Under the pieces are notes generated by a model. It had not been told where the DNA came from. It saw only the letters and a program-made list of their open reading frames with translations, and did not search any database. DNA of 64,000 nucleotides from Macrostomum lignano. Lineage: Eukaryota. The first letter of the stretch is position 1. Every line of letters starts with the position of its first letter. A program made the position numbers and the translations under genes. The stretch lies in the NCBI GenBank assembly GCA_002269645.1, contig NIVC01000006.1:434001-498000 (forward strand), in the 5' to 3' direction. Below are positions 2,941 to 50,098 of this stretch, in pieces.

Positions 2941-5133
2941 TTGAGCTCTGGTATTGATTCTGGTATTCGAATGTCTCTCATTAATCTATTCGTTCACTGA
3001 TTGAATTCGCTGAGGGGTAGTCGCGGAAATGCGAAGAGGAACTCATCGATAAATAATAAGTGAGTAGAGTAAGGTCGCAACGACTTACAGCTTCCTGAGT
3101 TACGTCGGTGAAACACGATGGCTGTGTGTACATTTAGCTTTGTCCGTCATACGAGACTGTACCGAACAGACGTAGGAAATGACGAACGTCAAAGGGTTGT
3201 AATAATTTTAAAGAAATGTTTTTGAACGTATAGCCACCAGTATAGAATTTAGTTTTAAAATTAACAGCCGCATTCTTCCAAAATAGTGCTTGACGAGTTC
3301 AGTCAACCAGCCAATCAATCAAACTATTCAACAGCAATGGCATAGCGGCCTTAACAATCCAGACGCTCTCAGAGAGAGCTACACACAATCGCAACTATGC
3401 AACTGTCAGATCAATTCGCATGCTCTGCTCGCCATCCGTCTCCCGTCAAAAACCAGTGCTGCAGCCTCCTCCTGCATCCCTCACTGGCTGCTCCGCACAA
3501 TTAATTCATCGGCCCGTGCGGCCGCTGTGCCTGCGGGCCCTTCATTAGCCAGTTCATGGAGACTCGCGTGAAGCTGCTGTTCGGTCTTCCCTGCCAGCTA
3601 TTCAACTGTAACTCCCTTCCCCTAATTCTGGGAGCTGAACTGCCAAAGCTTCAGCTTGAATGCATCTGCATGGCAATGCGTGTGGACTGTCTCAATTATA
3701 TTTCGGATAAGCAGAGCCATATTGCCAATTGCGCTGGCGGCTGGGCGATGCAGAACTATCGCTTGATTCTCACTGCTGTGTCTGTTGTCCCAATCTCTCT
3801 TGCTTTCGCAATTATAATCTGATAGCTGCTATATTTGAGCATTTTTGACTCCGTCTTACCGTCTACCCTAGATACGAGCAAGCATCACGGATTCTATATT
3901 CCTACAGGGAGCGTCTTACCGGGGACAGAAATGTCAAGGAAATCTTCAATCCTCGTTACTATAGTTGCTTGGACCTATACAGGTAGACAACAGTTTATTT
4001 TTATAATGGCTGTCAGAATTGAACGACAACAGTAACAACAAGCTACGTTAGCATTGAATAATATTGGTGTTATAAAGAAAACATAACTCTGACCATTTAT
4101 TGGTCCACTAGTCCGCCAGAGGTATGGCAAGTTGCGGCGAACAAACAACGTACAAACACGATCCTAACGTCAGTGCGCGCAATTCTCTCAACTCAACTGT
4201 AGATGAATTTATAACTCCGGCCAGACTATGAAAGTGACTCCATAGATTCCATTTAAGTCTTTTGGCTCCCGGACAGAGAAGTGACGTTTCTGTCCGCCCT
4301 TGCAACTTTGATAGGAATGGCTGCAAACGTACCGTTTTGGGTGGCACGTACGAACCGTTTCACGTCTCATACATAACGGCGGCTGGAGTGGCTCATCTAG
4401 GAGTATAAAAAATCTGTGGATAGCATAGCACTGCTCACCGATGAGACACAACTGAATCATGCTAGCTCGTAATTGATATCTGTTCAGAGAAAAGTTTCGC
4501 GCCTATGCTACGACTTTGGAAAACACACCCCCATTTAGTTGAGGATTTCAAGCCAACCGCTCAGAGTGAAATAGAACTTTTAGTTAAATGGCAAACAAAT
4601 GAGCTGCACTACAAGTTCTATTCTACAGAAATTTTGAATAGCTGAGAAAATTGGCAAAGCCGTATTCTTCTGCATGTGCGCCAGAGAGATCAGAGTAGCC
4701 ATTGGGAGACGCAGCCTGATTGGCTACAGCTTCCTCATCCAGTTTCTGATGCTGCAGCGCCTCGCTCCCCATATGTGTGCTTGTCCCTAAAGGCCGTAGC
4801 TGAGAGCCGCACACTGCAGCTTAATAGTAGCAGCGTAGCAAGTGCATCGTCATATTGCAGCACATCGGCTGGACCTCCAGCCAGCCTATTCCAGTATTCC
4901 AGTTGGGGCAAATACATCGGGGGGTGAAAAAAAGTGAAAACTTAGACAAAGTAGGAAACAAAAGAGCGAGGGAAGAAGATTCAGGTAGGAACTTAGCAGC
5001 GGAGACCGAGACGACTAGTCAAACAGACGCAAGACGAGAAGACAAAAATTGGAAGCGACGTGCAAGAAAGTTGATTGATTAAAAGGTAAAAGAGTTTTGG
5101 CAGGCAACGCTGCTGCAGACCAATTAACTAAAC

Positions 5134-5928
5134 ATGAGCAGCCCTGCGCCTTCACTGGCGACTGCAACGTCTGCTGGAGCAAATTCAGCGGTTTATTCAG
5201 CCCCCACCCGCTCAGCACCGGAGGAGGCTCTGCTCATCGCCGGCTACTCAGCCGCAGTGCTGCTCAGCACCGTCGGCAACTTGACAGTCATTGTGGTTGT
5301 GACGCGCGGCCGCCAGTGCCGGACAGATCTGCGCGGCTTTCTGCTCAGCCTGGCCGTTGCTGACCTTCTAATCGGCTGCTTCTGTCTGCCCTTCACTCTC
5401 GTGAACGTGCTCTACCGCCGCTGGCCTCTGCCTGACATTCTGTGCAAGCTGGTGTCTTACTGCCAGCTGGTGGCCGTGACGTCTTCTGTGCTGACCAACA
5501 TGGCTATTGGCTTCGATCGTTTCTGGGTGGTGACGTTTCCTCTGAGCCAGCGGCTGACCTTCAATCGGTCCCGAGCAGTGATTGTCGCTCTGTGGACGGC
5601 GTCGCTGCTGCTGTCCTCGGTGCAGCTGCGCGTCAGTGGAAAGTACGCCACCGGAGGCGGCGGACCCGATGACCCTCACAACGGCGCGGCAGCTGCCTCG
5701 GACAACGAGACAGCGTCAGTTGTGGTGGTGGAAATGTGTCGCGAGCATTGGCACAGCCCCGGCATCCAGAGGGCCTACTCAGTGTTTGTCCTGGTGCTCA
5801 CCTACCTGCTGCCCGTGTCCGTTCTCTGCGCCACCTACGCTGCCATCGGGAGAAAACTGTGGACCAGAACGCTGCCAGGCAATGCAGACTCGGCCAGGGA
5901 TCAGCAGCACGTCAGGGCCAAGCGAAAG
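5134..5928 (+). CDS. Class A neuropeptide GPCR (tachykinin/RYamide-luqin/leucokinin-receptor-like), coding exon 1 (N-terminus to TM5/ICL3)
   Basis: TM1 GN (TVGNLTVIVVV), TM2 LSLAVADLL, TM3 CKLVSY...GFDRF, ECL2 Cys (MCREHW), TM5 YLLP; ends ...RAKRK at an AAG|GCAAGT donor (phase 0). Confidence 0.92.
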
Positions 5929-6359
5929 GCAAGTTTTAGTTAGTTTTATCAATTTTCGATGATTCGATTCGGCGCTGCGCTCGTATGCTTTCTCTTGAGC
6001 ATCCTAAATGCTCTGGAGATACAGCAAATATCCTTTCCTTACTGGTCTTCAGCTCATTTCTAAGAAAACCGAGTGTAGCGTCCTACTTCAGTTGTCTGCA
6101 GTACGAGTACGCAACTGCTGGCAATTGGCCCTGACGCATGGAAAATAGAAAAATATAAAGAATGTCACGACGGGAAGTCAAGCTATTTTCAGTTCATGAT
6201 GCAAAACTGACAAGCATCGCAAAGTAAGGTCTAAAAGTTCTTAGCCCGATGGATAAGAAAAAGGTGAATACAGTAGGGCTGCACTGAACTAAATTTGTTT
6301 ATACTGTTCAAAAGTTTGACAGCACTGACCGTCAGTGCATCCCTTCCCAAAAAATCTAT

Positions 6360-6700
6360 AGAGCAACAGCGGTAGGTCAAGTGGCTGGCTTGGAAGTCAT
6401 CAGCTGGGCGCCCTCTATCTCTCAGAAGTCTCTCTAAGATCAGTATTGACAGCCTTCGGTAGTGGCGTCTCAGTTTGGTCGACTGTGTCGAATAATGTGT
6501 TGATGGTTTTTAGAATCTGGTGGCCTCGGAGGTTACAGCAGGCTCTCTAGTTACTGTGCCAGTCATTCGTTCTAGGAGTCAATTGTCTGCTCACCTCAGG
6601 TGACCTTCTAAGCGATCTAACAGCCCTCTCGATCTACCTGATCGTTGGATCCAGGTTGGTAGAGTTCACAGGATCTTGTGTGTAGCGATCCGTGACCATC
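6360..6700 (-). pseudogene. Possible highly decayed non-LTR RT fragment
   Basis: Minus-strand translation with stops gives DPTIR*IERAVRSLRR...KTINTLFDTVDQTETPLP...DFQASHLT, loosely matching the LINE RT N-terminal PT..E...A...L / l.n.i..t...P / NYRPISLT pattern. Confidence 0.3.
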
Positions 6701-6907
6701 TCGTCGCTAAGAGTGTATGATTAATCGACGTATGATCGACATATGATTCATGATTTATGGTCTTTGTAGGTCTTGCAGACCAATTTTCCTAAACTAAAGT
6801 TACCCTGTATGCAGAATCAAACCCACGGTACTTTGGTGCAAGTCCGTACCCCATGTAGGCCATGTAGGCCATTACCCCATGTAGGCCATGCTGAGTACCG
6901 GTTGAGG

Positions 6908-7357
6908 CTGGGGTCGAACATATCGGTATAGGGCAGGGGTCGAACATATCGGTATAGGGCAGGGGTCGAACATATCGGTATAGGGCAGGGGTCGAACATA
7001 TCGGTATAGGGCAGGGGTCGAACATATCGGTATAGGGCAGGGGTCGAACATATCGGTATAGGGCAGGGGTCGAACATATCGGTATAGGGCAGGGGTCGAA
7101 CATATCGGTATAGGGCAGGGGTCGAACATATCGGTATAGTGTAGGGGTCGAACATATCGGTATAGGGCAGGGGTCGAACATATCGGTATAGGGCAGGGGT
7201 CGAACATATCGGTATAGTGTAGGGGTCGAACATATCGGTATAGGGCAGGGGTCGAACATATCGGTATAGGGCAGGGGTCGAACATATCGGTATAGTGTAG
7301 GGGTCGAACATATCGGTATAGGGCAGGGGTCGAACATATCGGCATAGGGCAGGGGTC
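6908..7357. repeat. 26-bp minisatellite (GGGTCGAACATATCGGTATAGGGCAG), about 17 copies, in GPCR intron 1
   Basis: Period 26 (CGAACA at 6915, 6941, ...); variant unit with TAGTGTAG recurs. Confidence 0.98.
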
Positions 7358-7614
7358 AGCAAACGATCCGGCTCGTGGGCCACATTCGACGCGCAAAGCC
7401 TCTTTATCCAGCCCTCGGGTCCTTTGAAACTTCACAATAGCAATCCGGCCTACTCAAGGTTTGTGTCTCCTTTCACGCACTTCTCACCTCTCCCTTTCCA
7501 CTTCCCTTCTGTCTTCTCCTATTTCATCCCTTCTCTCGTCTCGTCTCCAATCTTTTTTCCTCACCTCTCCTCTCTTCCCCTTCTCTGGCCTGCAGTCATG
7601 CGAAGCTAAAAAGC

Positions 7615-7684
7615 GGAGAGCAACGACCTGCGCCCCCCCCCGAGGTGCCCTCTGGAGGACCGAAAGGCCCACGAAATGCAGGTC
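7615..7684 (+). ncRNA. HDV-like (nested double pseudoknot) self-cleaving ribozyme candidate
   Basis: P1 GGAGAGC(7615-21)/GCCCTCT(7647-53) with G1-U wobble and one A-C mismatch; P2 GACCTGC(7625-31)/GCAGGTC(7678-84) perfect; P3 GCC(7632-34)/GGT(7644-46); C-rich L3 ending CGA; GG(7654-55) for P1.1; P4 GGACC-GAAA-GGCCC; J4/2 A-C7672-GAAAT. Confidence 0.75.
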
Positions 7685-7767
7685 AGCAACGGGCCTTTCC
7701 CGAGGCCCACACCGCGACGCAGTCTCTTCGCCGCCCAATTGGCATCTGGCGGCCACCTGCCGATTAA

Positions 7768-10700
7768 ATGACTAGCCGACGCCTGAACCAGCCCGCCGAG
7801 CCTCAACGGCGGGCCCCCGGCGGCGCGAGGCGCCCCCGACCCAGCGGCCCGTGCGCGCGCGGCCCCCCAGTAGCCTGCACCTCCTGCAACTCAACGCAGA
7901 GGGCGTCGCCTCCAAGATGCCCGAATTGTGCAAGCTGCTGCTGGATCTGCGCATCGACGTGGCGTGCCTGCAAGAGACCCACACCACCGAGGGTCGGGAT
8001 CCGCGCCTGCCGGGGTTCAACGCGATCTGGCGCCACCGACAGAGCGGCCGGCGCTCCGGCGGCCCCACGCGCGGAGGAGGCGCTGCAATCGTCATCCGCG
8101 AGGGGCTGCGCTTCGAGGTGCTCCAGGAGCGCCCCTGCGCCCCCGATGACGTCACCACGGAGTGGGCCGGCGTCCGGGTTTTCCCCTCTGAAAAGAGCGT
8201 CGAGAGCCTGGACATCCACTGCCTCTACATCCCGCCGATCAGAACGGCTGAAGGCGACGACCGCGTGCAGCGCTTCAGCCCCCGGCACCTCCCGTCCGGC
8301 GTCAACACGGTGATCCTGGGCGACCTGAACGCGCACCATCCAGCCTGGGACCCCGAATCGGAAGAGTCGGACCTGGGCACGGCGGTCTTCGAGTGGTCCG
8401 TGGTGTCCGGCATGCGCGTCCTGAACGACGGCAGCGCCACCCACATGCCGCGCCGCGCCAACACCCGGCAGACGGCGCCTGACGTCAGCCTGTGCCACAA
8501 GTCGCTCGCCAACCGGGCCGAGTGGCAGGTCCGGGGAGACGTCGGCTCGGACCACCTGCCGATCTGCATCACCATCCACAGCCGAGGCGCGGCCAAGCGC
8601 GGGGGCGCCGCCCGGCGGTCCTGGGCGAAGGCGGACTGGGCCAGTTTCCGCGCCCGGACCGAGGAAGCCCTGGCTGGCTGGGAGGCCTGCCCGCCCGAGT
8701 CGGTCAGCGAGGCCAACCAGCAGCTGACCACGGCCATCCAGGAAGCCGACAAGGCGTCTGTCCCTCGCGGGGCGCGGCCCTCCGCCAAGGCCTGGTGGAC
8801 GCCAGAGGTCGACGACGCCGTGAAGGCTCGCCGCGCCGCGTGGGCCGCCGCCGCCGCCGACCCGAGCGTGCGGCCTGCCTGGAATCGAGCCTGTGCCGAC
8901 GCCAAGAAGACGATCGCCGACGCCAAACGCGAGAGCTGGAGGACCTTCGCCGGCGAGGTGGCAGCTGACAGCGACCACTCCAAGATCTGGAGAATTGTCC
9001 GCTCCCTCGACGGCAGAAACAGCAACCTGCAGCGGGACGCAGCGCTCCGGGTGGGCCAAAAGACGCTCGTCCAGTCGAAGGACATCGCCGAGGCCTACGC
9101 CCGTGAGTATGCCTCCGTCAGCCGCCTCCCGCAAGACCGCAGGACGCGAGACCTCCGCCGCGAGAACTTCCGCAGCAGCGTTTCGCGAGCCGGCGCCGAC
9201 AGCCATGGGAGCAGAGACTTTGGAAAGCCGTTCTCGCACCGCGAGCTGGACAGGGCTCTCCACTCCCTCCCGGCCAGGAAGGCCCCAGGACCCGATGAGA
9301 TCTGCGCTGAACATCTGCAGCACCTCGGTGCCGCTGGACGCCGGGCGGTCCTGCAGCTGATCAACGCGTCCTGGACCCAGGGGGAGGTCCCCGCGGCGTG
9401 GCGCCGTGCCCACATCGTGCCGATCCTCAAGAAGGGCAAGCCGGCCGACGAGATCGGCTCATACCGGCCGATTGCCCTTACCTCCACTCTGGCCAAGCTG
9501 GCCGAGCGTCTGGTTCAAGCGCGGCTCTACTGGTGGGCCGAGTCCCGGCACCTGCTGCACCCCGCCCAAGCCGGCTTCCGCAAGCGGCGCAGCACCGAGG
9601 ACCAGATTGCCCGGCTCACCCAGCTCATCAGCGACGGCCACCAGGCGGCCCCCGCCAGGCGGACGGTCGTCGTCCTGTTCGACTTCCGGCGGGCGTACGA
9701 CACCGTCTGGAAGCAGGGCCTGCTGCACAAGCTGCACAACGCCGGCATCCCAGCGGCCGGGGTCCGCTGGGTCAGCAGCTTCCTGGCCGATCGCCGCGCT
9801 GCCGTCAGGGTGGACGGCGCGCTGAGCAGCTGGCGGCTCTTCCGCGAGGGCCTGCCACAGGGGAGTGTCCTTGCCCCTCTGCTCTTTGCGCTGTACATCA
9901 ACGACCTGCCTGACCACCTGCCGTCCGACTGCACGCCGTTCCTCTACGCCGACGACCTGGCCATCGCAGTGCAAGGCCTGACCGTGGAAGAGGCCGAGAC
10001 GAAGGCGCAGGCTGCGATCGACGCGGTCTCCGACTGGGCGAACGAGTGGCGGATGGAGCTGGCGCCGAACAAGTGCGCCGCTTTCCTGTTCACCACCACC
10101 GCCGGAGAGGCCAGCCGTGAGCTGCGTCTGCGGCTGAACGACGCCCCGCTCTCGACGGACCGCCAGCCGCGCTTCCTCGGCGTCATCCTGGACCGGCTGC
10201 TCAGCTTCACGGCGCACGCCGCCAACGTCGCCGGCCGCGCCCGCGCCCGCTGCGGCGTTCTGGCGGCGCTGTCTGGCAGCAACTGGGGCGCCAAGCAGAG
10301 CGACGTGCGCCAGCTCTACACGGCATATGTGCGGCCGGTGCTGGAGTACGCTGCCGGCGCCTGGATGCCGACGGCCTGCAGGACAGCTATCGACCACCTG
10401 GACCGGGCCCAGCGCCTGGGCGCGCGCATCATCACCGGGTGTCCACGGAACACCAGGTCGGAGGTGCTGGAGCGCGAGGCTGGATTGCCGCCGATGGCAG
10501 TCCGCGCGGAGATGCACGCTGGCCTCCTCCACGAGCGCGCCCTCCGGCTGCCGCATGACAACCCGCTGCGCGCCTGCGCGGCCAGCGTCGGCCCGCGCCG
10601 CCGCCTCCAAAGCGCCCGTGGCTGGCGCGAGACGGCGGCCAGTGTATGCAGCGCTGCGGGCCTGAGCGGCTTCCCGCGAGAGCCCGTCCACGCTATCCCG

Positions 10701-11683
10701 ACGACACCTCCCTGGGCTGTTCTGGACTCTGTCACCCTCGGGCTGCAGTTGGCCTCCCCAACCTCGCGGGGGACCTGCCGGAGGCCCGGAGAGCCGCGGC
10801 GCAGCAGACACTTGCCGCCCTGCCGCCCGCCAGCACCGTGATCTGGACCGACGGAGCGGCGAAGGACGGCATCCTGGACGGCGGCAGTGGCGTCCTGGTC
10901 GAGCCCAACACGACGCTGTGCGTCGCTGCTGGCCATGTGACGTCCAGCTTCCACGCCGAGTTAGTGGCCATCGCTGAGGCCCTTCGGTGGGTGCTCGCGG
11001 CCCCGGACCCGGCAGAGCTGTCGCCGGTCCGCATCTGCTCCGACTCCCTGAGCGCGCTTAGCGCGCTCGCGTCCGGCCCCGGGTCGACGGGCGCCACCAT
11101 GATCGACGCCGTCTGGGGCAGCCTCGCCGACCTCGCGGCCCGGGGAACCTCGGTCCACCTGCAGTGGGTGCCTGGCCACGCGGGAATCCCAGGCAACGAG
11201 GCCGTGGACGAGATCGCCAAGCAAGGCACCACGCTGGCGCAAGGCACCGCGCCCGTACCGCTAGCTGCCGCGCAGGCTGCCGTCCGCCGCTACTGCCTCG
11301 CCCGCTGGCACCAGATCTACAACGCGGCGGCCACCGAGGCGGCGAGCACGAGCTCGCTTGCCTGGCACCTTGCCTGCACGGCGGGCCGCCTGCCGCCTCA
11401 GCCGACAAGCGACCTCACGCGGCGGCAGGAGCGGCTGATCTGCCAGCTGCGCGCCGACCGCTGCCCGGCCCTGCGGGGCTTCCAGGCCGCCATCGGCGTT
11501 GACGTGGCCCCCACCTGCCGCCTCTGTGGCGATGGAGAGGAGACGGCGGCCCATCTGCTGATCTCCTGCCCCGCCCTGACATCACACCGCTGCCGCCTCT
11601 GGGGGCCAAGCCCGGAGCCCGCGGCAGTTTTCGAGAACTGCGTCGCGGTGTTGAACTTCCTCGGGAAGGCGGGCGCCATCTGA
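7768..11683 (+). CDS. Retrotransposon polyprotein APE endonuclease + reverse transcriptase + RNase H + C-terminal CxxC-H-C finger; two -1 frameshifts as assembled
   Basis: APE: LQLNAEG, DVACLQETH, ILGDLNAHH, GSDHLPI. RT: KAPGPD, SYRPIALTS, FDFRRAYDTV, GLPQGSVLAP, LYADDL, FLGVILD. RNase H: WTDGAA, AELVAI, SDSLSAL, WVPGHAGIPGNEAVD. Finger: CRLCGDGEETAAHLLISC. One extra base in a homopolymer upstream of the APE (e.g. C6 at 7863-68) and in G5 (10768-72) would fuse ATG 7768 through stop 11683. Confidence 0.9.
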
Positions 11684-12780
11684 CGCCCGGTGCCATGGGC
11701 CCTGGCCCGAGCACGCCCGAAGAAGAAGAAGAAGAAGAAGAAGAAGAAGCTAAAAAGCTGCATAGCCTTCGTGGCTCCTTCAGCCAGCACATACTTTCTC
11801 AAGTATACTCATATCTCAAAGTGTACTCATGTACATGTACACTTTCGCAGGTATAATTGCTCATTCCTGCTACCTGCTACTTTACGCTCGTAGTAACATC
11901 AAGACATTAGCTCGCACTGCTGTGATATCAGTAGATTAACTTTCCTCAGTGTATTTGTTTTTTGTCAAAAAAATGCACAGGCTTGTGCAGAGGGGCTGGT
12001 TAAGGGTTAGGATAGGACGACCTCGAATTCAATCAGTTTCTCTCTTTGCTTTCAATTGCCCAGCCTGCTCAGTCTGTTTCGAACGCTGAGCAGGGCAGGA
12101 CCGTTTTAGACAAAGTTCTTTGAATGTGAAGCGCTTACAGGCTGCCCCAGTCGCTGGAACTGGAATGGCATGACTGTAGGCTCAATGGGAAGCATCTTGC
12201 TATTCCTCTTGGCAATTGCGTGCAGCCTGACTGACTCTCGCTGCCAGAGAACAACTTGAGCCGCCATAAATTTGATGTCTGTTAGTCTCTCAGTCTGCTT
12301 AGGCTGATCTTCCAGCCCTTCAAGCTCTTCGAAAGCGGTGGTCGAGCATTTCCCGACGGATATATGGGCCAGACTGCCACATATGCTAAGCAAAACTGCT
12401 TGATATTTGTTTGTATAGTTTTCACAAAAAAGTCTTTAATTCTTTGTTGATTGACCTTTTTTTGCGCTAGCTAGTCACAATGTTTTATGGCCGCTAGATC
12501 ATAAAAACAACCAACGAAGAAGCCAATGCATTGCATTAAATTACAAGTAGAGATTACAAGTTTTTATATAGGTCAGAAGAGGAACTACCATATCTGATTT
12601 TGGTTTGGTACGGTCTAGCGCAGCAATAATCTGTTAGCGTCACTGCGGTGTACCGATGTAATTTAGACTTTTTTGTCCTTTGAAAGTGGGTGCATGCAGT
12701 CACTGCTCATACAAGGACAACTTAAGTAGAAGGACGCAACACTCGAAATCTGTGGTAAATGTTTTGAAGGCAACTTCTTG

Positions 12781-12990
12781 CCGAAAAATACACTACAGAG
12801 ATAGGAGGTTTTAATTTTTTTCAGCACTAAAATTGTTATTGCTTTTGATAGGAGGCAGATCCAGTGTTCATCTTTTGATATGTTGTGCCTTTCTTATTGC
12901 TCTATCGATATTTATAAAGCTTTTCGTTCAAAAATAGTTTTAAAGGCAGGTTTCACCGGAAAAATACACTACAGAGATAGGAAATTTCAA
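12781..12990 (+). repeat. Short dispersed repeat, copies at ~12781, ~12956 and ~18920
   Basis: CCG(G)AAAAATACACTACAGAGATAGGA at 12781 and 12956; CCGAAAAATACATTACGGAGATAGGG at 18920; each followed by an AT-rich ...CACTAAAA-like tail. Confidence 0.65.
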
Positions 12991-15299
12991 GATTTTCAAC
13001 ACTAAAACAGTGATCGGGTCTCTTAACAGTGTCAGAGAAAGTTCTAATCACACTATTTTGTGCCTAACATGCTGCTCTAACGACGCATTAATCGATTTTT
13101 CATGTTAAATTGGTCTGTCACTTGAAAAAACGTTTAAATTAATTACAAAATGCGAAAAGTTGCCTTCAAAACATTTACCACAGATTTCGAGTATAGCGTC
13201 CTATATATATGTTACTTGAGTAGTCCTTGTGCTCATATTGGAAAAGGCGTTCAACCTTTCTTCTATGGTTCTAGTAGTTCTTGGTCTCTGACGCATCGCG
13301 CTTCATCAGTTCATCAGGTTGGAGACACCCATAGCACTTGTTACCTGCTTTCCGTTTCCTGACTCATCTACCTGATCCTGATCGCATTCAGATCTCCATG
13401 CAGTTCTTCTGGAATTCTAACACCCCAGAACTCGGGAAGAGCTTGTGTAATTTTTTTTCGTAAACTCGAACAGCTCTCTAAGCTCATCGATCCAGACCAG
13501 CAATCTAGTAAGTGCCTCCGGGATTACACTGTAGTTGCTGGGCTCAGACTCTCCGGAGTTCTGCGAAAGTGCATTCTTAACTTCCTCAAGACTTCCTCAA
13601 TGTTGCGCAGAAAATTGCTACGAACTTGCTGTTTTATTGCAGTAATAAAGTAAAGTATTATAGTTCATTGTCGATCATCAGCATCTAATGAATACAAACT
13701 TCGCACTTATTAACAATAGGCTTGTTTGAAACTTGGCCTCTTTACGGGTTCATGTGGTTAATATTGCACTTGTAGCTTGTCAAATACGAAAGTCCCCCAG
13801 CTTATGGTCAATTTTGATTCCCATATTCAGAGTTAAAAGAGGCTTTACAATTTTTAATAAATTTCGCACACTTACAATGCGACTTCGATGTCATTAGCTT
13901 AATTGGTGAGTTCAGAGGCACGCATAATTGTACATGTTGACCATCAAGCATTGCTCAAGCACGAGTATAGGTAAACGAGTTTAGTAGCGCTTACCTAAAA
14001 TGCTTTTCCTCTCCATTGCTTACTCAAGGAGGCCCAGGAATTAGAGAACGCGAAAGTTATTTGAGGTGCGAGGGACGCTAGAGTAGGTTGATTGGCTGAA
14101 GCATGTGGCAAACTAGCCAGCAGCAGTTAGGCAAAACTTTAGTAGATGTGGATAGAGTGCTGAAGTGCGCCTTAGTGTGTTCGGAAAGTCTCCGGGATTC
14201 TGTGACGAATTCGGGAGTGAGTGGAGGCCCTGTTTCCGTGTTTAGTTTTCCTGTAAATTTCTCGATTTGCATTGAATCAACTCTACAAGTTTGGGTGAAC
14301 TCAGTGTGTGAGCATCTGTGCACGGTTAGTTTGGGACAAGGCTCCTACCGGTTTGACTTGGAGATTTACTTCGTACTTGTACGCTCGTGTTTTTGATTTT
14401 TTGCCTAAATGCACCTATTCCGAACTGCTGAAAGTTGAACACCGAAAAACAAGTTAGGCCACTTTGAAACTTTGAAACTAGGAATCGAGATAGGAATCGA
14501 AAAGACGTGAAAAAAGCTAAAACCATAATTCGGATTTTAAATGGATAATCGGCGTTTCGGATTCGGATTCGGCCGGCGGCGTGGATTTCATTCGCGACCT
14601 GGCCCTGGGGCGCGCCCTGTGACGCTGACAGCGTATTTTGTTGTTGTTGTTGTCAATTCAACGACGTCAAAATATAGACGCCTGCTACATCAACGGTGTA
14701 ATGTAAAAGTGCTTCAGGGAATCGAATAATTCTTTATGATGAGCATGAGCACTACTGACTTTGGCACTGCAGTAATCTGCCGCTTGTGCCCAACATTAGC
14801 TATAGATCGATGCGCACTCAGCTTTGGTGCTGGTTGATTTTGCAATAGACTGGAGACAAAGTGCATAGGTACTCTGTTTGAAATAGACCGGAAGCAATGC
14901 AATGCGGCATAATACTAGGGTATTGCAGAAAAAAGTTTTTGAAAAACTCCGCTATGTGCTCTACAGATCGCTCAAATAGAGCTGTTTCCTGAATTTTTTT
15001 CTTAAAGTGCACAAAAATGGTCTCAGCTGAGCATGAGCCTCAGAAATAGAGGCGGAAATCAGCACTACATGTGGACTACTGAAGCTTGACCAGGAATTAA
15101 GTAGATAAGCTTCTAGGAACAATGCAAGGCTGCTTTAGGACCAAAAGTGCCACTTAAAGAACTGTAAAATCCCACAGTTTCAGTAGAAAAAAATTGAAGT
15201 CCACTTTAGCACCATAGTTTTACTGTGAACTTTAAGACTATTTATTGATTCAAGCCACGCGGTTTTGAGACATTCATGAACTGTACGCACATATTTGCT

Positions 15300-15650
15300 C
15301 CGTTCCGATCGTGTGGGAAGAAGCATAGGCGGCCAAGGATTGCCATAGACTATACCGAGGTCTCAATTCGAGGTACTTGCCTAACAACATGCATCCATGG
15401 GTTGTTTGATTGACAGGCAAGGGCAAGGTCGCTACTTCTCGACGCTGGATGCCAAATCAGAGCACTATCAGATGCTGCTGAACGATAAGGAAAAGGATCC
15501 TAACGAGCTTCGTGATAACCATGGGATCAGCATAAATGGGAGCGAGGTTGTCAATTCAGCTTGTCTGTGGTATGCCGTCTAATGAGCGTCGTTTCGTGTG
15601 ATCTTATGTGCTTAGCGACGCTTTATATTGCATGGATGACGTCGTCCGCC
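15300..15650 (+). pseudogene. Decayed Ty3/Gypsy LTR-retrotransposon reverse transcriptase fragment
   Basis: With frameshifts: KKHRRPRIAIDY-RGLN (KKdG..R.ciDYR.LN), GRYFSTLDAKSEHYQMLLNDKEKD (yFStlDlksgYhQi.l...dk), and CMDDVV at the YxDD position. Confidence 0.7.
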
Positions 15651-15883
15651 TCTATCGAACTTGTTCGCATCACATGGAAAGGTTGCGGAGAATTTTGGAG
15701 AAAATTCTGGAAGACGCAATAAAATTTTTGCTGCGAATTTTGGAAGACGCAAAATTTTGGAAGACGCAATAAAAAAGGCCACTGAATTGTGCGCTTATGG
15801 GGGTCACGGAAATCAAGTATCCAACGGTGACCAACGGGCGGTTAAGCCATTTCTTCGGATAGAGTCGAATCTCAAAAACATTT

Positions 15884-17398
15884 CCTGCGGTGCCAAAATG
15901 AGTGCCTGTGGCGCTAAAATGAGCGCCTGTGGCGCTAAAATGAGTGCCTGCGGCGCCAAATGAGTGCCTGCGGCGCCAAAATGAGTGCCTGTGGCGCTAA
16001 TGAGTGCCTGCGGCGCTAAAAGGAATGCCTGCGGCGCCAAAATGAGTGCCTGTGGGGATAAAGTGAGTGCCTGCGGCGCTAAAAGGAGTGCCTGCGGCGC
16101 TAAAATGAGTGCCTGCGGCGCCAAAATGAGTGCCTGCGGCGCTAAAATGAGTGCCTGCGGCGCTAAAAGGATTGCCTGCGGCGCCAAAATGAGTGCCTGC
16201 GGCGCCAAAATGAGTGCCTGTGGCGCTAAAATGAGTGCCTGCGGCGCCAAAATGAGTGCCTGCGGCGCTAAAATGAGTGCCTGCGGCGCTAAAAGGAATA
16301 CCTGCGGTGCCAAAATGAGTGCCTGCGGCGCTAAACTGAGTGCCTGCGGCGCTAAAAGGATTGCCTGCGGCGCCAAAATGAGTGCCTGCGGCGCCAAAAT
16401 GAGTGCCTGCGGCGCTAAAATGAGTGCCTGCGGCGCTAAAAGGATTGCCTGCGGCGCCAAAATGAGTGCCTGCGGCGCCAAAATGAGTGCCTGTGGCGCT
16501 AAAATGAGTGCCTGCGGCGCCAAAATGAGTGCCTGCGGCGCTAAAATGAGTGCCTGCGGCGCTAAAAGGAATACCTGCGGTGCCAAAATGAGTGCCTGCG
16601 GCGCTAAAATGAGTGCCTGCGGCGCTAAAAGGATTGCCTGCGGCGCCAAAATGAGTGCCTGCGGCGCCAAAATGAGTGCCTGTGGCGCTAATGAGCGCCT
16701 GCGGCGCTAAAAGGAATACCTGCGGTGCCAAAATGAGTGCCTGCGGCGCTAAAATGAGTGCCTGCGGCGCTAAAATGAGTGCCTGCGGGGCTAAAAGGAA
16801 TACATGCGGCGCCAAAATGAGTGCCTGCTGCGCCAAAATGAGTGCCTGTGGCGCTAAAATGAGTGCCTGTGGCGCTAAAATGAATGCCTGTGGCGCTAAA
16901 AGGAATACCTGCGGCGCCAAAATGAGTGCCTGCGGCGCTAAAATGAGTGCCTGCGGCGCTAAAAGGAATACCTGCGGTGCCAAAATGAGTGCCTGCGGCG
17001 CTAAAATGAGTGCCTGCGGCGCTAAAATGAGTGCCTGCGGCGCTAAAAGGAATACCTGCGGTGCCAAAATGAGTGCCTGCGGCGCTAAAATGAGTGCCTG
17101 CGGCGCTAAAATGAGTGCCTGCGGCGCTAAAATGAGTGCCTGCGGCGCTAAAATGAGTGCCTGCGGCGCTAAAATGAGTGCCTGCGGCGCCAAAATGAGT
17201 GCCTGCTGCGCCAAAATGAGTGCCTGTGGCGCTAAAATGAGTGCCTGTGGCGCTAAAATGAATGCCTGTGGCGCTAAAAGGAATACCTGCGGCGCCAAAA
17301 TGAGTGCCTGCGGCGCTAAAATGAGTACCTGCGGGGCTAAAAGGAATACATGCGGCGCCAAAATGAGTGCCTGCGGCGCCAAAATGAGTGCCTGCGGA
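15884..17398. repeat. 21-bp minisatellite (TGAGTGCCTGCGGCGCYAAAA), about 72 copies, with higher-order repeats
   Basis: Period 21; variant units AAAAGGAATACC and AAAAGGATTGCC recur at 273-bp spacing, and a GCCTGCTG variant at 378-bp spacing. Confidence 0.98.
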
Positions 17399-17559
17399 AT
17401 GAAAACCAACAGTTGCCACTGTTGTCGATCATTAACTATTTACTAGCCTCTGTAGTCAGCCTTCTTTACTCCTATTAGCACTGTTATTGTTTTAGTATAG
17501 TGTGGTCGACTGTCAGTCTGCGATTGGTGCACCTGTACGCTTAACCTCAGCCTTGTTTT

Positions 17560-17617
17560 TTGCTATTGCTATTTGCTATTTGCTATTTTGCTATTTGCTA
17601 TTTGCTATTTGCTATTG
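17560..17617. repeat. (TTTGCTA)n heptanucleotide microsatellite
   Basis: About 8 tandem TTTGCTA/TTTTGCTA units. Confidence 0.9.
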
Positions 17618-17929
17618 TAGAAATTGTAGAATCGATCGGCAATCAGTGACTGACAGTGTTGCAGAACTTGCAGCATGATAATTGACTAAATAATATCATT
17701 TTAATGATAATTACTAATTATTATAAGCTAATTAATAAAGTATATATGGGCGCAGGCTATTTTAAAAAGTTCTAAAAACTTACTTTAAGATCGAAAGTAT
17801 TAATTATTTCAGCTTAATTGACCTAAAAGTGAAGTATTTATCATTACTCTCTGTAAAACTACGCAACAATTTCATTCATTTTAACAAAATTTTGATTGTT
17901 TGCATACTCAAAATTTTAAAAGTATAGGA

Positions 17930-18083
17930 CTATCGGATTATCGGGAAAATTTGAAAATTGTATCGGAAGTTACCGAAGTCCGATACCGTCAAAAAAGTAT
18001 CGACTTCCGATACTCCGATACCCAAAAGGTATCGCCGATAGTATCGGAGTATCGGAGTTTCGGAATTGTGCCCAACACTAGTA
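17930..18083. mobile_element. CCGATA/TATCGG-rich MITE-like remnant with internal inverted repeat
   Basis: TCCGATACTCCGATAC (18006-18021) is the exact reverse complement of GTATCGGAGTATCGGA (18041-18056); many TATCGG motifs; ends GCCCAACACTAGT. Confidence 0.5.
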
Positions 18084-18563
18084 AACATAATATACGAAAG
18101 ATGTTTCATAAGCAATGAGAATGAGAGTGGATGGTGTGATAACTCCTGGATATATGGGGCAGAGTCTAGACAACATTTTAAAGCCAAAAAATTTGCAAAT
18201 ACTGGTAGACTCACTTAAAAGACTTCAAGGCTCATAAACCAAAAAATCCCAGGAAAATTTTCGCCCAGAGAGTCGACAGAGTAGGTAACGAGTAGACAGG
18301 TAGACAGGTTACCCATTCAAAGTCATGAAAGTCATGATAAAACTTTTCGTTACTTTTGGAAAACCCTCTAAAATCGCTGTCTGCAGCCAAGGCCCAGTCT
18401 CCTTTTTCCTTTTTTCCTTTTGCTTTTCTCTGGGAAAGGAAACGAAATGATGGTCACAGATACGCTCTCCGCAAATTAATTGTATATTTTCATTTATGAA
18501 TATGACAAATACACGACATACGCCCATAGTAACTAAATTGTCCCTAAACTTAACACCTGCCAG

Positions 18564-18773
18564 GTTGTGAAAATGCTGATTATTGTGGTCCTACTGTTCG
18601 CCATCTGCTGGCTGCCGCTGCACATATTCAACGTGCTGGTGGACTATACCCAGGTGCAGGCGTGGCTGGACAGCGTCACCCTGGAGAGGATTTTTGTCGC
18701 ATTCCACTGGACCGCCATGGCCAACTCGTTCGTCAATCCAATCGTCTACGGATTCCTGAATGACTCTTTTCGG
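18564..18773 (+). CDS. Neuropeptide GPCR coding exon 2 (TM6-TM7)
   Basis: Acceptor CCTGCCAG|GTT; VVKMLIIVVLLFAICWLPLH (CWxP) and FHWTAMANSFVNPIVYGFLNDSFR (NPxxY); donor CGG|GTGAGA; phase 0 at both ends. Confidence 0.95.
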
Positions 18774-19554: not shown

Positions 19555-19893
19555 AACGACCTCGCCACGCTGATGAAGCCAGTCTGCCGGGCACTGCCCA
19601 GCTGCCTCCGCCGCGGCTGCCAGCTGACGCCCCTGCCCGCAGCCTCCGCAGTTGAACATTCGAGACATCCAAGACCGATCTGCGACCGCGACCGCGACTA
19701 CCGCACTCTGGGCGGGTCCGTCTTCGAGCTGCAGGACGTTCCCGGCGGCGCAGTCTCAACTGGCGTCACACAGGGGCCGATGATTCTGGCCGACCCTGAC
19801 AGAGGCGATGAAGACCGGCAGCAGCTGATGCAGCACCGAAAGCAGAGCAGGAGAGTTGGAACTGTTTTGACACAGTTTGTGACGCAGTTGTAG
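19555..19893 (+). CDS. Neuropeptide GPCR coding exon 3 (helix 8 and C-terminal tail); full protein about 447 aa
   Basis: Acceptor GGTTTAG|AAC in phase 0 gives FR-NDLATLMKPVCRALPSCLRRGC (helix 8 plus Cys candidates for palmitoylation); open to TAG 19891-93. Confidence 0.75.
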   Translation, partial: NDLATLMKPVCRALPSCLRRGCQLTPLPAASAVEHSRHPRPICDRDRDYRTLGGSVFELQDVPGGAVSTGVTQGPMILADPDRGDEDRQQLMQHRKQSRRVGTVLTQFVTQL

Positions 19894-20902: not shown

Positions 20903-21904
<1,002 letters not shown>

Positions 21905-23050: not shown

Positions 23051-24490
23051 GTCTTGGTGAGCGCCCCTGTATCTTGGGTGGGCGACCCTGTCTCTTGGGT
23101 GGGCGACCCTGTCTCTTGGTTGGGCGCCCCCGTCTCATGCTGGGCGCCCCTGTCTCTTTGTGGGCGCCCCTGTCTCTTGGGTGGGCGCCCCTGTCTTTTG
23201 TGTGGGCGCCCCTGTCTCTTGGTGGGCGCTCCTGTATCTTGGGTGGGTGACCCTGTTTCTTGGTGGGCGCCCCTGTCTCTTGCTGGGCGCCCCTGTCTCT
23301 TTGTGGGCGCCCCTGTCTCTAAGGGTGGGCGCCCCTGTTTCTTGGTGGGCGCCCCTGTCTCTTGGTGGGCGCCCCTGTCTCTTTGTGGGCGCCCCTGTCT
23401 CTTGGGTGGGCGCCCCTGTCTTTTGTGTGGGCGCCCCTGTCTCTTGGTGGGCGCTCCTGTATCTTGGGTGGGTGACCCTGTCTCTTGGTGGGCGCTCCTG
23501 TCTGATGGTGGGCGCCCCTGTCTCTTGGTGGGCACCCCTGTCTCTTTGTGGGCGCCCCTGTCTCTTGGTGGGCGACGCTGTCTCTTGGGTGGGCGCCCCT
23601 GTCTCTTGGGTGGGCGCCCCTGTCTTTTGTGTGGGCGCCCCTGTCTCTTTGTGGGCGCCCCTGTCTCTTGGGTGGGCGCCCCTGTTTCTTGGTGGGCGCC
23701 CCTGTCTCTTGGTGGGCGCCTCTGTCTCTTGGGTGGGCGCCCCTGTCTCTTGGGTGGGCGCCCCTGTCTCTTGGTGGGCGCCCCTGTCTCTTGGTGGGCG
23801 CCCCTGTCTCTTTGTGGGCGCCCCTGTCTCTTGGGTGGGCGCCCCTGTCTTTTGTGTGGGCGCCCCTGTCTCTTGGTGGGCGCTCCTGTATCTTGGGTGG
23901 GTGACCCTGTCTCTTGGTGGGCGCTCCTGTCTCTTGCTGGGCGCCCCTGTCTCTTTGTGGGCACCCCTGTCTCTTTGTGGGCGCCCCTGTCTCTTGGTGG
24001 GCGACGCTGTCTCTTGGGTGGGCGCCCCTGTCTAATGCTGGGCGCCCCTGTCTCTTTGTGGGCGCCCCTGTCTCTTGGGTGGGCGCCCCTGTTTCTTGGT
24101 GGGTGCCCCTGTCTCTTGGTGGGCGCCCCTGTCTCTTTGTGGGCGCCCCTGTCTCTAAGGGTGGGCGCCCCTGTTTCTTGGTGGGCGCCCCTGTCTCTTG
24201 GTGGGCGCCTCTGTCTCTTGGGTGGGCGCCCCTGTCTCTTGGGTGGGCGCCCCTGTCTCTTGGTGGGCGCCCCTGTCTCTTGGTGGGCGCCCCTGTCTCT
24301 TGGGTGGGCGCCCCTGTCTCTTGGGTGGGCGCCCCTGTCTTTTGTGTGGGCGCCCCTGTCTCTTGGTGGGCGCTCCTGTCTCTTGGTGGGCGCCCCTGTC
24401 TCTTGGTGGGCGCCCCTGTCTCTTGGTGGGCGCCCCTGTCTCTTGGTGGGGGCCCCTGTCTCATGGTGGGCGTCCCTGTCTCTTGGGCCC
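23051..24490. repeat. 20/21-bp GC-rich minisatellite (GGTGGGCGCCCCTGTCTCTT), about 70 copies
   Basis: Tandem units with a GGCGCC core; the same family occurs in reverse orientation at 54790-55334. Confidence 0.98.
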
Positions 24491-42800: not shown

Positions 42801-43461
42801 AGACAGCAAGCATCCCCAGACAGCAAGCATCCCCAGACAGCAAGCATCCCCCAGACAGCAAGCATCCCCAGACAGCAAGCATCCCCCAGACAGCAAGCAT
42901 CCCCAGACAGCAAGCATCCCCCAGACAGCAAGCATCCCCAGACAGCAAGCATCCCCAGACAGCAAGCATCCCCCAGACAGCAAGCATCCCCAGACAGCAA
43001 GCATCCCCCAGACAGCAAGCATCCCCAGACAGCAAGCATCCCCAGACAGCAAGCATCCCCCAGACAGCAAGCATCCCCAGACAGCAAGCATCCCCCAGAC
43101 AGCAAGCATCCCCCAGACAGCAAGCATCCCCCAGACAGCAAGCATCCCCCAGACAGCAAGCATCCCCCAGACAGCAAGCATCCCCCAGACAGCAAGCATC
43201 CCCAGACAGCAAGCATCCCCAGACAGCAAGCATCCCCAGACAGCAAGCATCCCCAGACAGCAAGCATCCCCCAGACAGCAAGCATCCCCCAGACAGCAAG
43301 CATCCCCCAGACAGCAAGCATCCCCCAGACAGCAAGCATCCCCAGACAGCAAGCATCCCCCAGACAGCAAGCATCCCCAGACAGCAAGCATCCCCCAGAC
43401 AGCAAGCATCCCCCAGACAGCAAGCATCCCCAGACAGCAAGCATCCCCAGACAGCAAGCAT
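27840..43461. repeat. Giant satellite, 17/18-bp unit CAGACAGCAAGCATCCC(C), 15.6 kb (roughly 900 units)
   Basis: Uninterrupted tandem array; unit length varies through the C4/C5 run; diverged higher-order left flank and abrupt right end. Confidence 0.99.
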
Positions 43462-49554: not shown

Positions 49555-50098
49555 CTACCAGTTCAACCCGTCTCACTACCAGACCAACGTGACCATCAAG
49601 ATCCTGTTGAAGGCCATCGCCAACCTGCCGCACCCGGACTTCTCGCTGTGCAAGTACCTCATCGAGCCAGACAAACTGCGCGAGGAGCCGCTAAGCAGCG
49701 TCGTTGCCCTTGGCAACCAGCTGGAGACGTGCGATTTCGAAGAATTCTGGCAAAGTCTGGCCTCTACTAAAAGTAGTATACCAGCAATCGGCTCAGTGGT
49801 TGGGTTCACCGATTCTGTGCGCAAATTCATCTGTCACGTGGTTGGCATCAGCTATCAGAAGATTAAAACCGACCAGCTGTGTCGGATTCTCGACATCAAG
49901 CGCGACCAGCTGGCCGTGTACCTGGAAGAGTACGGCTGGAAGCTGGTCCCAGACGACCCCAGTCACGTGTTCGTGTTTAACTATGAGGAGACGATCAAGA
50001 CTAGGAATATTAGCGAGAAGATCGGCTTTCCGCAGGTGAAGCAGTTGGCTCCGGTGCTGCAGAATGCCGCCAGCGACTGTCACAAGAGAGCCAAGTGA
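49555..50098 (+). CDS. EIF3K: eIF3k exon 3 (terminal); full protein 235 aa
   Basis: TTTGCAG|C TAC; YQFNP...ILLKAIANLPHPDFSLCKY...LETCDFEEFWQ...GFTDSVRKFICHVVGISYQ...YGW...EETIKTRNISEKIGF; stop TGA 50096-98; AATAAA near 50326. Confidence 0.97.

What the first reader, a model, noticed from the sequence alone, without database searches (positions are those of the whole stretch)
5929..18563. Sense-oriented ribozyme inside a neuropeptide-receptor intron: potential co-transcriptional cut of the host pre-mRNA
Seen: the element lies on the same strand as the GPCR, about 1.7 kb after a non-canonical GC donor and about 10.9 kb before the acceptor. Established: the intronic CPEB3 HDV-like ribozyme can cleave its host pre-mRNA. 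Inference: the GPCR promoter could drive element RNA in the cells that express the receptor, and cleavage could compete with splicing of a long GC-AG intron. That would couple retrotransposon expression to receptor dosage, and it could differ between insertion-present and insertion-absent alleles.
Basis: inference. Interest (0 to 1): 0.7.

Follow-up and report, generated by a model that had tools for sequence, protein, structure and literature searches.

The report
Ribozyme-capped retrotransposon in receptor intron
A 4.1-kb jumping gene whose very first bases fold into a probable self-cutting RNA sits, in the same orientation as the gene, inside a long intron of a flatworm neuropeptide-receptor gene; this is a known lifestyle for such elements, and whether it damages the receptor's mRNA is plausible but untested.

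Summary
A three-exon peptide-receptor GPCR (NPY/RYamide/QRFP-like, probably Macrostomum lignano) has a 12,635-nt first intron (5929-18563). Its donor is AAG|GCAAGT and its position is conserved in a nemertean ortholog. In that intron, on the same strand, lies a non-LTR retrotransposon flanked by target-site duplications (7615-11748; endonuclease, RT, RNase H, (GAA)10 tail). Its first 70 nt (7615-7684) fit the HDV-like double-pseudoknot fold. The predicted cleavage site is exactly the first base after the duplication, and C7672 is in the catalytic position. Chance gives about 2e-4 per position. Two distant relatives (L002, L018) carry the same architecture upstream of their ORFs, with different but complementary P1 and P2. 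Weak points: Rfam models do not detect it, and this copy has an A·C mismatch in P1 and another in P4. No other M. lignano copy could be fetched. The ribozyme most likely serves the element, freeing its 5' end from host read-through RNA, as known for R2, L1Tc, RTE and baggins. The proposed effect on receptor splicing is a reasonable analogy (Cpeb3; Fong 2009), countered by exon tethering, and not testable here. Verdict: new member of a known kind, of moderate interest.

The parts
5134..5928 (+). GPCR exon 1 (start codon to TM5/ICL3, ends RAKRK)
   Evidence: ORF and Pfam 7tm_1 profile 1-195. Homologs align up to 5928.
5929..18563 (+). Intron 1, 12,635 nt, GC-AG (donor GCAAGT 5929-5934, acceptor cag 18561-18563)
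   Evidence: Sequence. The junction is supported by contiguous homolog residues. The intron position is conserved in Tubulanus.
6906..7357 (.). 26-nt tandem repeat x17 in the intron, outside the element
   Evidence: TRF
7602..7614 (+). Left target-site duplication GAAGCTAAAAAGC (GCTAAAAAGC unambiguous, 7605-7614)
   Evidence: Exact 13-mer shared with 11746-11758
7615..7684 (+). HDV-like ribozyme motif. P1 7615-7621/7647-7653. J1/2 7622-7624. P2 7625-7631/7678-7684. P3 7632-7634/7644-7646. L3 7635-7643. P1.1 GG 7654-7655 with CC in L3. P4 7656-7671 (GAAA loop). J4/2 CGAAAT 7672-7677 (C7672). Predicted cleavage between 7614 and 7615. Mismatches: A7619·C7649 in P1 and A7659·C7668 in P4.
   Evidence: Descriptor scan, shuffles, same architecture in relatives L002 and L018. 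The P2 and P4 pairs of the model recur in the MFE fold. No Rfam hit.
7615..11748 (+). Non-LTR retrotransposon, 4,134 nt, 71% GC, single copy in the window
   Evidence: TSD, domains, 93-99% identity to M. lignano UniRef A0A1I8JA46, self-BLAST
7851..10841 (+). Reading frame with AP-endonuclease (Exo_endo_phos) and reverse transcriptase (RVT_1)
   Evidence: Pfam E 2e-12 and 6e-39
10646..11683 (+). Reading frame with RNase H and a C-terminal zinc knuckle. It is in the -1 frame relative to the RT frame, and the shift lies in the G5 run 10769-10773.
   Evidence: Pfam RNase_H E 5.5e-14. P0001 reads through as if the run were G6.
11719..11748 (+). (GAA)10 3' tail of the element
   Evidence: Sequence
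11746..11758 (+). Right target-site duplication
15884..17397 (.). 21-nt tandem repeat x72 in the intron
   Evidence: TRF
18564..18773 (+). GPCR exon 2 (TM6 CWLP to TM7 NPIVY, ends NDSFR|gtgaga)
19555..19893 (+). Probable GPCR exon 3 (C-terminal tail NDLATLM... to the stop)
   Evidence: In frame after tttag. Resembles the paralog tail ADLRDLAQRLRCCRSGRQL. No Pfam domain.

Best explanation
The feature is a young APE-type, RNase H-bearing non-LTR retrotransposon of Macrostomum lignano, inserted in sense orientation into the ancestral first intron of a peptide-receptor GPCR. Its first 70 nt encode an HDV-like self-cleaving ribozyme. The ribozyme's job is for the element. When the element is transcribed as part of a longer RNA (here the receptor pre-mRNA, or elsewhere an upstream tandem copy), the ribozyme cuts immediately 5' of G7615. 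That sheds the host sequence and leaves an element RNA with a defined 5'-OH end, which is what is copied at the next insertion. This explains why the full-length insertion begins exactly at the predicted cleavage site. Any cut in the receptor pre-mRNA is a side effect. Its consequence for receptor mRNA depends on how fast this copy cleaves and on exon tethering, and is probably modest. Shown here: gene structure, TSD, protein domains, fit to the fold, coincidence of the cleavage site with the 5' end, and the same architecture in two relatives. Inferred: catalytic activity, co-transcription with the receptor, and any effect on splicing.
For: Element: EN, RT and RNase H domains. Exact 13-nt TSD and (GAA)10 tail.

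Fold: P1 has 6 of 7 pairs with G·U at the cleavage site. P2 has 7 bp, P3 is GCC/GGU, P1.1 is GG with CC in L3, P4 carries a GAAA loop, and J4/2 is CGAAAU.

Chance: the descriptor hits 16 times in 128 kb of the window and 1.8e-4 per position in dinucleotide shuffles of the element. None of 3000 shuffled 5' UTRs had a hit starting at nt 1. None of 300 shuffled elements had a hit with P2 of at least 7 bp, a short J1/2 and a CNAA J4/2.

Relatives: L002 186-301 and L018 349-410 lie upstream of their EN-RT ORFs and have the same layout (P1 7 bp, P2 7 bp, P3 GCC/GG[CU], P1.1 GG, J4/2 C[GA]AA). Their P1 and P2 sequences are different but fully complementary. These were the only + strand hits of that quality in 751 kb. 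The L018 motif begins right after an (AAC)7 tail-like microsatellite. Rfam RF02682 aligns to exactly those L018 coordinates, though below threshold.

Literature: HDV-like ribozymes at +1 of R2, L1Tc, RTE and baggins release the element from co-transcripts (PMC6765202; PMC3185411).
Against: No Rfam family matches the window motif, even at E up to 10. A covariance model built from L018 alone does not retrieve it. This copy has an A·C mismatch in the middle of P1 and one in P4, so it may be slow or dead. Of 36 metagenomic relatives with N-terminal coverage, none had a strict hit within 1 kb upstream. The barnacle relative L001, 59% identical to L002 at the protein level, shows no convincing motif. 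No second M. lignano copy could be obtained to check the consensus. No RNA data are available.
Confidence: 0.7

Rival explanations
1. The ribozyme is active and fast, cuts the nascent receptor pre-mRNA minutes before the 3' splice site 10.9 kb downstream is made, and measurably lowers exon1-exon2 splicing. This would make the insertion a hypomorphic allele and tie element RNA output to receptor-expressing cells.
For: The geometry is right: sense strand, 1.7 kb after the donor and 10.9 kb before the acceptor. The Cpeb3 ribozyme lies 9,931 nt before the next exon, and inhibiting it raises CPEB3 protein expression. Fast synthetic HDV ribozymes in introns block splicing (PMC10919898; Fong 2009 as cited in PMC2995048). 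The element has no AATAAA or ATTAAA near its 3' end, so read-through to exon 2 is expected.
Against: Activity of this copy is unproven, given the P1 and P4 mismatches. Exon tethering lets a ribozyme-cut intron splice normally (Dye 2006 as cited in PMC2995048). The receptor ORF is intact over three exons, so there is no sign of relaxed constraint. There are no expression or polymorphism data.
Confidence: 0.15
2. The ribozyme is real and active but harmless to the host. Cleavage happens after U1/Pol II tethering or in the excised lariat, so the element RNA is released from the intron without changing receptor mRNA output.
For: Exon-tethering results. The 1.7 kb between donor and ribozyme gives time for 5' splice-site commitment. 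Sense intronic copies of ribozyme-bearing elements are described as the normal transcribed state for baggins and RTE.
Against: Fast HDV ribozymes did abort splicing in Fong 2009. Nothing here measures kinetics.
Confidence: 0.4
3. This particular copy is inert. The A7619·C7649 mismatch in P1 and the weak P4 disable the ribozyme, and the frame problems disable the element. It is then just intronic filler that is spliced out.
For: Mismatches in P1 and P4. A frameshift in the G5 run relative to P0001, and no AUG upstream of the conserved EN residues.
Against: The copy is 93-99% identical to the only other copy seen, so it is young. An A·C pair in a GC-rich helix may be tolerated. The homopolymer shift could be an assembly error.
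Confidence: 0.25
4. The motif is a chance fit in a GC-rich 5' UTR, and the 5' end is set by an internal promoter or by full-length reverse transcription of a capped RNA.
For: Rfam is silent. Loose descriptors give many false hits. The MFE z-score is only -0.96.
Against: The chance of a hit starting at nt 1 is about 2e-4. Two relatives have the same architecture and compensatory helices at the same place.
Confidence: 0.07

Closest known systems
L1Tc/NARTc HDV-like ribozyme (L1TcRz, Pr77) of Trypanosoma cruzi
   Same: An HDV-like ribozyme occupies the first ~70-77 nt of an APE-RT-RNase H non-LTR element and cleaves at +1. It releases the element from longer co-transcripts and leaves a 5'-OH (PMC3185411).
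   Different: L1Tc has an N-terminal 2A peptide and a dual promoter/ribozyme hallmark. The window element has no 2A motif, though several relatives do. The host is a flatworm, not a kinetoplastid. RT phylogeny was not done, so clade membership is open.
R2, RTE (drz-Agam-2 type) and baggins elements with 5' HDV-like ribozymes
   Same: These are promoter-less non-LTR elements that rely on co-transcription and self-cleavage. Baggins and RTE copies are transcribed because they lie in introns (PMC6765202).
   Different: R2 is rDNA-specific, has a restriction-like endonuclease and is transcribed by Pol I. RTE lacks RNase H. The present element is APE + RT + RNase H and was inserted at an A-rich, non-specific site.
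Mammalian CPEB3 intronic HDV-like ribozyme
   Same: An HDV-like fold in sense orientation in a long intron about 10 kb upstream of the next exon, with J4/2 CGAA. There is evidence that its cleavage lowers host mRNA maturation (PMC10919898).
   Different: CPEB3 is a host-conserved, TE-independent sequence. The one here is the 5' end of a TSD-flanked retrotransposon, and no host effect has been shown.
Twister-variant ribozymes in Schistosoma mansoni non-LTR retrotransposons
   Same: A flatworm non-LTR retrotransposon that uses a self-cleaving ribozyme in retrotransposition (PMC8501958, abstract).
   Different: A different ribozyme class (twister rather than HDV-like) and a different flatworm lineage.

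Membership tests
HDV-like self-cleaving ribozyme | Nested double pseudoknot with P1 (7 bp), P2, P3 (3 bp), P1.1 (2 bp) and P4 in the canonical order | tested here: met
   7615-7684 fits, with one A·C mismatch in P1 and one in P4. The P2 and P4 pairs of the model recur in the MFE fold.
HDV-like self-cleaving ribozyme | Cleavage 5' of a G at +1 that closes P1 (G·U or G-C); in retrotransposons this is the element's first base | tested here: met
   G7615·U7653 closes P1, and the TSD ends at 7614. The chance of this coincidence is about 2e-4.
HDV-like self-cleaving ribozyme | Catalytic C opening J4/2, followed by purines (CNRA) | tested here: met
   C7672-G-A-A-A-U. Relatives have CGAA (L018) and CAAAC (L002).
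HDV-like self-cleaving ribozyme | Helices supported by covariation among homologs | tested here: inconclusive
   Only three sequences. P1 and P2 differ at most positions yet stay complementary in L002 and L018 (7/7 each), and P3 is invariant. There are too few sequences for statistics, and 36 other relatives gave no strict hit.
HDV-like self-cleaving ribozyme | Match to a curated HDV-family covariance model (Rfam) | tested here: not met
   No hit in the window at gathering score or at E up to 10. The relative L018 gets RF02682 at 20.4 bits, below the gathering score of 44.
HDV-like self-cleaving ribozyme | Mg2+-dependent self-scission giving a 2',3'-cyclic phosphate and a 5'-OH | not testable with these tools
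   Needs an in vitro transcription and cleavage assay.
APE-type non-LTR (LINE) retrotransposon | AP-endonuclease and reverse transcriptase (here also RNase H), target-site duplication, simple-repeat 3' tail | tested here: met
   Pfam Exo_endo_phos, RVT_1 and RNase_H. A 10-13-nt TSD and a (GAA)10 tail.
L1Tc/ingi clade | RT phylogeny within the clade; N-terminal 2A peptide; Pr77 hallmark | tested here: inconclusive
   No 2A motif in the window element, but 2A-like motifs in relatives L003, L007, L010, L014, L018 and L036. RT tree and Pr77 comparison not done.
CPEB3-type host regulatory intronic ribozyme | Host-owned sequence, conserved in the orthologous intron and independent of a mobile element | tested here: not met
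   The motif lies inside a TSD-flanked retrotransposon. The orthologous Tubulanus intron was located but not scanned for a motif.

The most novel reading that the evidence does not exclude
The insertion is a natural, possibly polymorphic, ribozyme-dependent attenuator of a neuropeptide receptor in a regenerating flatworm. Co-transcriptional self-cleavage 1.7 kb into a 12.6-kb GC-AG intron would lower receptor mRNA and at the same time launch retrotransposon RNA specifically in receptor-expressing neurons. That would be a TE-borne counterpart of the Cpeb3 ribozyme.
Probability: 0.1. Interest if true: 0.6.

Novelty: new member of a known kind. Interest (0 to 1): 0.35.

Why it matters
If confirmed, this would add a free-living flatworm and an RNase H-bearing APE-type lineage to the list of retrotransposons that use a 5' HDV-like ribozyme; I found no such report for Macrostomum in the paper search. 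It would also provide a concrete locus where a TE-borne ribozyme sits in a long intron of a neuronal receptor gene. As recalled from the literature and not checked here, M. lignano can be made transgenic and has inbred lines. The open question of whether intronic ribozyme cleavage costs the host gene expression (Fong 2009 versus Dye 2006) could therefore be tested at a natural locus. On its own, the arrangement is what is expected of this class of elements.

Tried and rejected
- **Rfam:** gathering thresholds on the whole window, then E up to 10 on 7350-7950. Nothing found.
- **First loose descriptor:** 268 and 282 hits per strand, and it missed the candidate. Discarded as uninformative. Relaxed scans of the relatives' 5' regions also gave only noise, with more hits on the G/T-rich minus strands.
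- **Strict scan upstream of metagenomic relatives:** within 1 kb upstream of 36 relatives, 0 hits against 5 in the reverse-complement control. There is no clade-wide signal.
- **5' UTR alignment:** L002 versus the barnacle L001 shows no similarity. MAFFT could not align the L018 and L002 ribozymes.
- **Covariance model from L018 alone (P2+P3+P4):** does not retrieve the window motif at E up to 10. A single-sequence model is dominated by primary sequence.
- **Attempts to reach other M. lignano copies or an empty allele:** exact-protein look-ups of the exon-1 ORF and of P0001 failed. A protein search with the three-frame translation of the 5' UTR found nothing.
- **Alternative GT donor at 5933:** rejected because it breaks the frame with exon 2 (sequence).
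- **The 26-nt repeats as an element promoter:** rejected as part of the element because they lie outside the TSD.
Full report
**What is there: the host gene**

The + strand carries a rhodopsin-type GPCR. Exon 1 (5134-5928) runs from the start codon through TM5 and ends ...RAKRK. The next bases are GCAAGT. Exon 2 (18564-18773) follows ...cctgccag and encodes VVKMLIIVVLLFAICWLP...NPIVYGFLNDSFR, followed by gtgaga.

- Pfam 7tm_1 covers profile positions 1-195 in exon 1 and 201-260 in exon 2, so nothing is missing between them.
- The best named relatives are RYamide, QRFP-like, PrRP-like, substance-K-like, NPFF and NPY2 receptors. 'Neuropeptide receptor' is therefore a fair label.
- A M. lignano paralog (P0014) and all orthologs read ...KRK[VI][VI]KML... 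without a break.
- tblastn of three homologs stops at 5928 and resumes at 18561/18564 with contiguous residues. No other GPCR piece exists in the window.
- In the nemertean Tubulanus polymorphus the orthologous gene has an intron at the same codon boundary and phase (AAG|GTACGT ... cag|GTGATC, about 23.9 kb). The intron is therefore ancestral, and the GC donor is a derived T-to-C state in the consensus AG|GCAAGT context.
- A GT four bases downstream cannot be the donor, because it breaks the frame.
- A probable third exon (19555-19893) supplies the C-terminal tail. The open reading frame is intact across all three exons.

**What is there: the element**

An exact 13-mer, GAAGCTAAAAAGC, lies at 7602-7614 and again at 11746-11758. 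Between the two copies is a 4,134-nt, 71% GC sequence ending in (GAA)10.

- It encodes an AP-endonuclease and a reverse transcriptase in one frame (7851-10841). RNase H and a zinc knuckle follow in the -1 frame (10646-11683).
- The best database match is a Macrostomum lignano UniRef model, 93-99% identical over its pieces. The window is therefore very probably M. lignano, and the family is young.
- The frame shift lies in a G5 run (10769-10773) that the other copy reads as if it were G6. It may be a real lesion or a homopolymer assembly error.
- The conserved endonuclease residues start upstream of the first in-frame AUG at 7917.
- The element has one ATTAAA, near its 5' end, and no poly(A) signal at its 3' end.

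**The ribozyme motif**

Starting at the first base after the TSD, nt 7615-7684 can be drawn as an HDV-like double pseudoknot:

| Part | Sequence | Note |
|---|---|---|
| P1 | GGAGAGC / GCCCUCU | 6 of 7 pairs; G·U at the cleavage site; A7619·C7649 mismatch |
| J1/2 | AAC | |
| P2 | GACCUGC / GCAGGUC | 7 bp |
| P3 | GCC / GGU | |
| L3 | CCCCCCCGA | |
| P1.1 | GG | pairs with CC in L3 |
| P4 | AGGACC-GAAA-GGCCCA | one A·C mismatch |
| J4/2 | CGAAAU | opens with C7672 |

The P2 and P4 pairs of the model also appear in the non-pseudoknot MFE fold, although the overall energy is unremarkable (z = -0.96).

**Is it more than chance?**

- A first, loose descriptor was useless.
- A tighter one requires P1 with at least 6 of 7 pairs and a paired G at +1, a 3-bp P3, L3 containing CC, P1.1 GG, P2 of at least 5 bp, a P4 hairpin, and a C 3-7 nt before P2'. 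It gives 16 hits in the 128 kb of both strands, and 7615 is one of them.
- In dinucleotide-preserving shuffles of the element it hits 1.8e-4 per position.
- None of 3000 shuffled 5' UTRs had a hit starting at nt 1.
- None of 300 shuffled elements had a hit with P2 of at least 7 bp, J1/2 of at most 5 nt and a CNAA J4/2. That last criterion was chosen after seeing the candidate.

The strongest point is the coincidence of two independent landmarks: the TSD-defined 5' end and the base of P1.

**Relatives**

I could not reach any other M. lignano copy. Protein relatives at 25-40% identity were fetched from ENA and NCBI contigs (L001-L005) and from JGI metagenomes (L006-L085).

Across 751 kb, the only + strand hits with P1 7/7, P2 of 7 bp and a short J1/2 were L002 186-301 and L018 349-410. 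Both lie upstream of the EN-RT ORF.

- They share the window's layout: P1 7 bp, P2 7 bp, P3 GCC/GG[CU], P1.1 GG, J4/2 C[GA]AA. Their P1 and P2 sequences are quite different but fully complementary.
- The L018 motif is a compact 62-nt ribozyme that starts right after an (AAC)7 microsatellite resembling the tail of an upstream copy.
- Rfam's HDV-F-prausnitzii model aligns end to end with exactly those coordinates, though at only 20.4 bits against a gathering score of 44.
- L002 has a large, very stable two-hairpin P4 domain.

Several results temper this support:

- 36 other relatives with N-terminal coverage have no strict hit within 1 kb upstream.
- The barnacle element closest to L002 has none that convinces.
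- A covariance model from L018 alone does not find the window motif.
- Rfam finds nothing in the window.

I therefore rate the motif as very probably a genuine HDV-like ribozyme of the family. Whether this particular copy, with two A·C mismatches, still cleaves is uncertain.

**How it most likely works**

HDV-like ribozymes at +1 of R2, L1Tc, RTE and baggins elements free the element RNA from a longer co-transcript. Baggins and RTE lack promoters and are transcribed because they sit in introns or behind other elements (PMC6765202). L1TcRz cleaves at +1, leaves a 5'-OH and is fast (PMC3185411). L1Tc has the same APE-RT-RNase H make-up.

The window element fits this pattern. Transcription from the receptor promoter would carry Pol II through the element. 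Cleavage between C7614 and G7615 would give two products:

- an exon 1 + 1,686-nt fragment ending in a 2',3'-cyclic phosphate;
- a 5'-OH element RNA still attached to the polymerase.

By established HDV-ribozyme chemistry, a 5'-OH end is a poor substrate for 5'-monophosphate-dependent exonucleases. Transcription should therefore continue to exons 2 and 3.

The 3' splice site is 10,949 nt downstream of the cleavage site, which means minutes of transcription. An active ribozyme would therefore usually cut first.

Whether that costs spliced mRNA is genuinely open:

- Fast HDV ribozymes in introns aborted splicing (Fong 2009).
- Blocking the Cpeb3 ribozyme, which lies 9,931 nt before the next exon and has a half-life of 2-3 min, raised CPEB3 protein expression (PMC10919898).
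- A hammerhead-cut intron, however, spliced normally through exon tethering (Dye 2006, as cited in PMC2995048).
- Cleavage could equally occur in the excised lariat.

Nothing in the sequence decides between these. There are no data here on expression or polymorphism. The receptor ORF shows no decay.

**Comparison and novelty**

This is a new member of a known kind: a retrotransposon with a 5' HDV-like ribozyme lying in sense in an intron. What is new is the host, a free-living flatworm (a full-text search for Macrostomum lignano plus ribozyme found nothing relevant), the RNase H-bearing lineage outside trypanosomatids, and the particular gene. It is not a CPEB3-type host ribozyme, because it lies inside the TSD. 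Clade assignment (I, Ingi, Nimb and related clades) was not tested.

**Verdict**

Noticed in passing
window 27850-43461: A 15.6-kb satellite of a 17-nt unit (CAGCAAGCATCCCCAGA, about 897 copies, 95% matches) with extreme strand asymmetry (GC skew -0.4, AT skew +0.69).
   Followed up: partly
window 6906-7357 and 15884-17397: Two tandem arrays inside the GPCR intron: 26 nt x17, ending 258 nt upstream of the element, and 21 nt x72. Both lie outside the element's TSD.
   Followed up: partly
window 7440-7596: A long CT-rich tract ending in cctgcag, 18 nt upstream of the insertion site, in sense. It looks like a strong 3' splice (or trans-splice) acceptor and could trap exon 1 into a chimeric transcript just ahead of the ribozyme.
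   Followed up: no
window 10769-10773: The EN-RT and RNase H frames are offset by -1 at a G5 run. The other M. lignano copy (P0001) reads as if it were G6. This is either a real frameshift or a homopolymer assembly error. No in-frame AUG precedes the conserved endonuclease residues (first AUG at 7917).
   Followed up: partly
window 5929-5943 versus protein P0013: The UniRef M. lignano model closest to this receptor (95-97% identity) ends RAKRKASFS*. It reads through the GC donor into the intron and lacks TM6-TM7, so public gene models probably miss exons 2 and 3 of this gene or its homeolog.
   Followed up: partly
L086 (Tubulanus polymorphus) 1466/1467 and 25341/25342: The orthologous QRFP-like receptor has an intron at the same codon boundary (KRK|V, phase 0), about 23.9 kb long, with a canonical GT donor. 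The intron is ancient and long in both phyla.
   Followed up: yes
L003 2020 and 6809; L007 501; L010 545; L014 292; L018 635; L036 5102: 2A-like 'D[VI]ExNPGP' peptides in L003, L007, L010, L014, L018 and L036, as in L1Tc. Most lie upstream of the endonuclease-RT match; the L003 6809 and L036 5102 sites lie downstream of it (L003 6809 at the start of a second gene at 6797). None is found in the window element.
   Followed up: partly
L002 157-182 and 494-520: A 26-nt direct repeat that includes the start codon (GGTAAATGAACCCAGACGCCC...) brackets the ribozyme-containing 5' region. A 111-codon ORF starting at 163 ends in TAAATG, overlapping the main ORF start.
   Followed up: no
L018 1-55 versus 4986-5040: The first 55 nt of the contig are identical to a stretch in the RNase H region of the same contig. 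An (AAC)7 tract directly precedes the ribozyme. This suggests head-to-tail copies or an assembly join.
   Followed up: partly
window 49589-50098 and 55378-55875: Exons of two other genes on the + strand: a CSN8/PSMD8/eIF3K-family protein (Pfam E 5.5e-27) and an MFS_2 sugar-type transporter (E 1.6e-23).
   Followed up: partly
window 20904-21904, 23052-24486, 51673-52964, 53535-54386, 54791-55334, 55951-56761, 63229-63718: Many further micro- and minisatellites, including (GACA)250, 20-nt and 18-nt GC-rich units, and (CT)406. The 20-nt unit at 23052-24486 recurs in reverse complement at 54791-55334.
   Followed up: no
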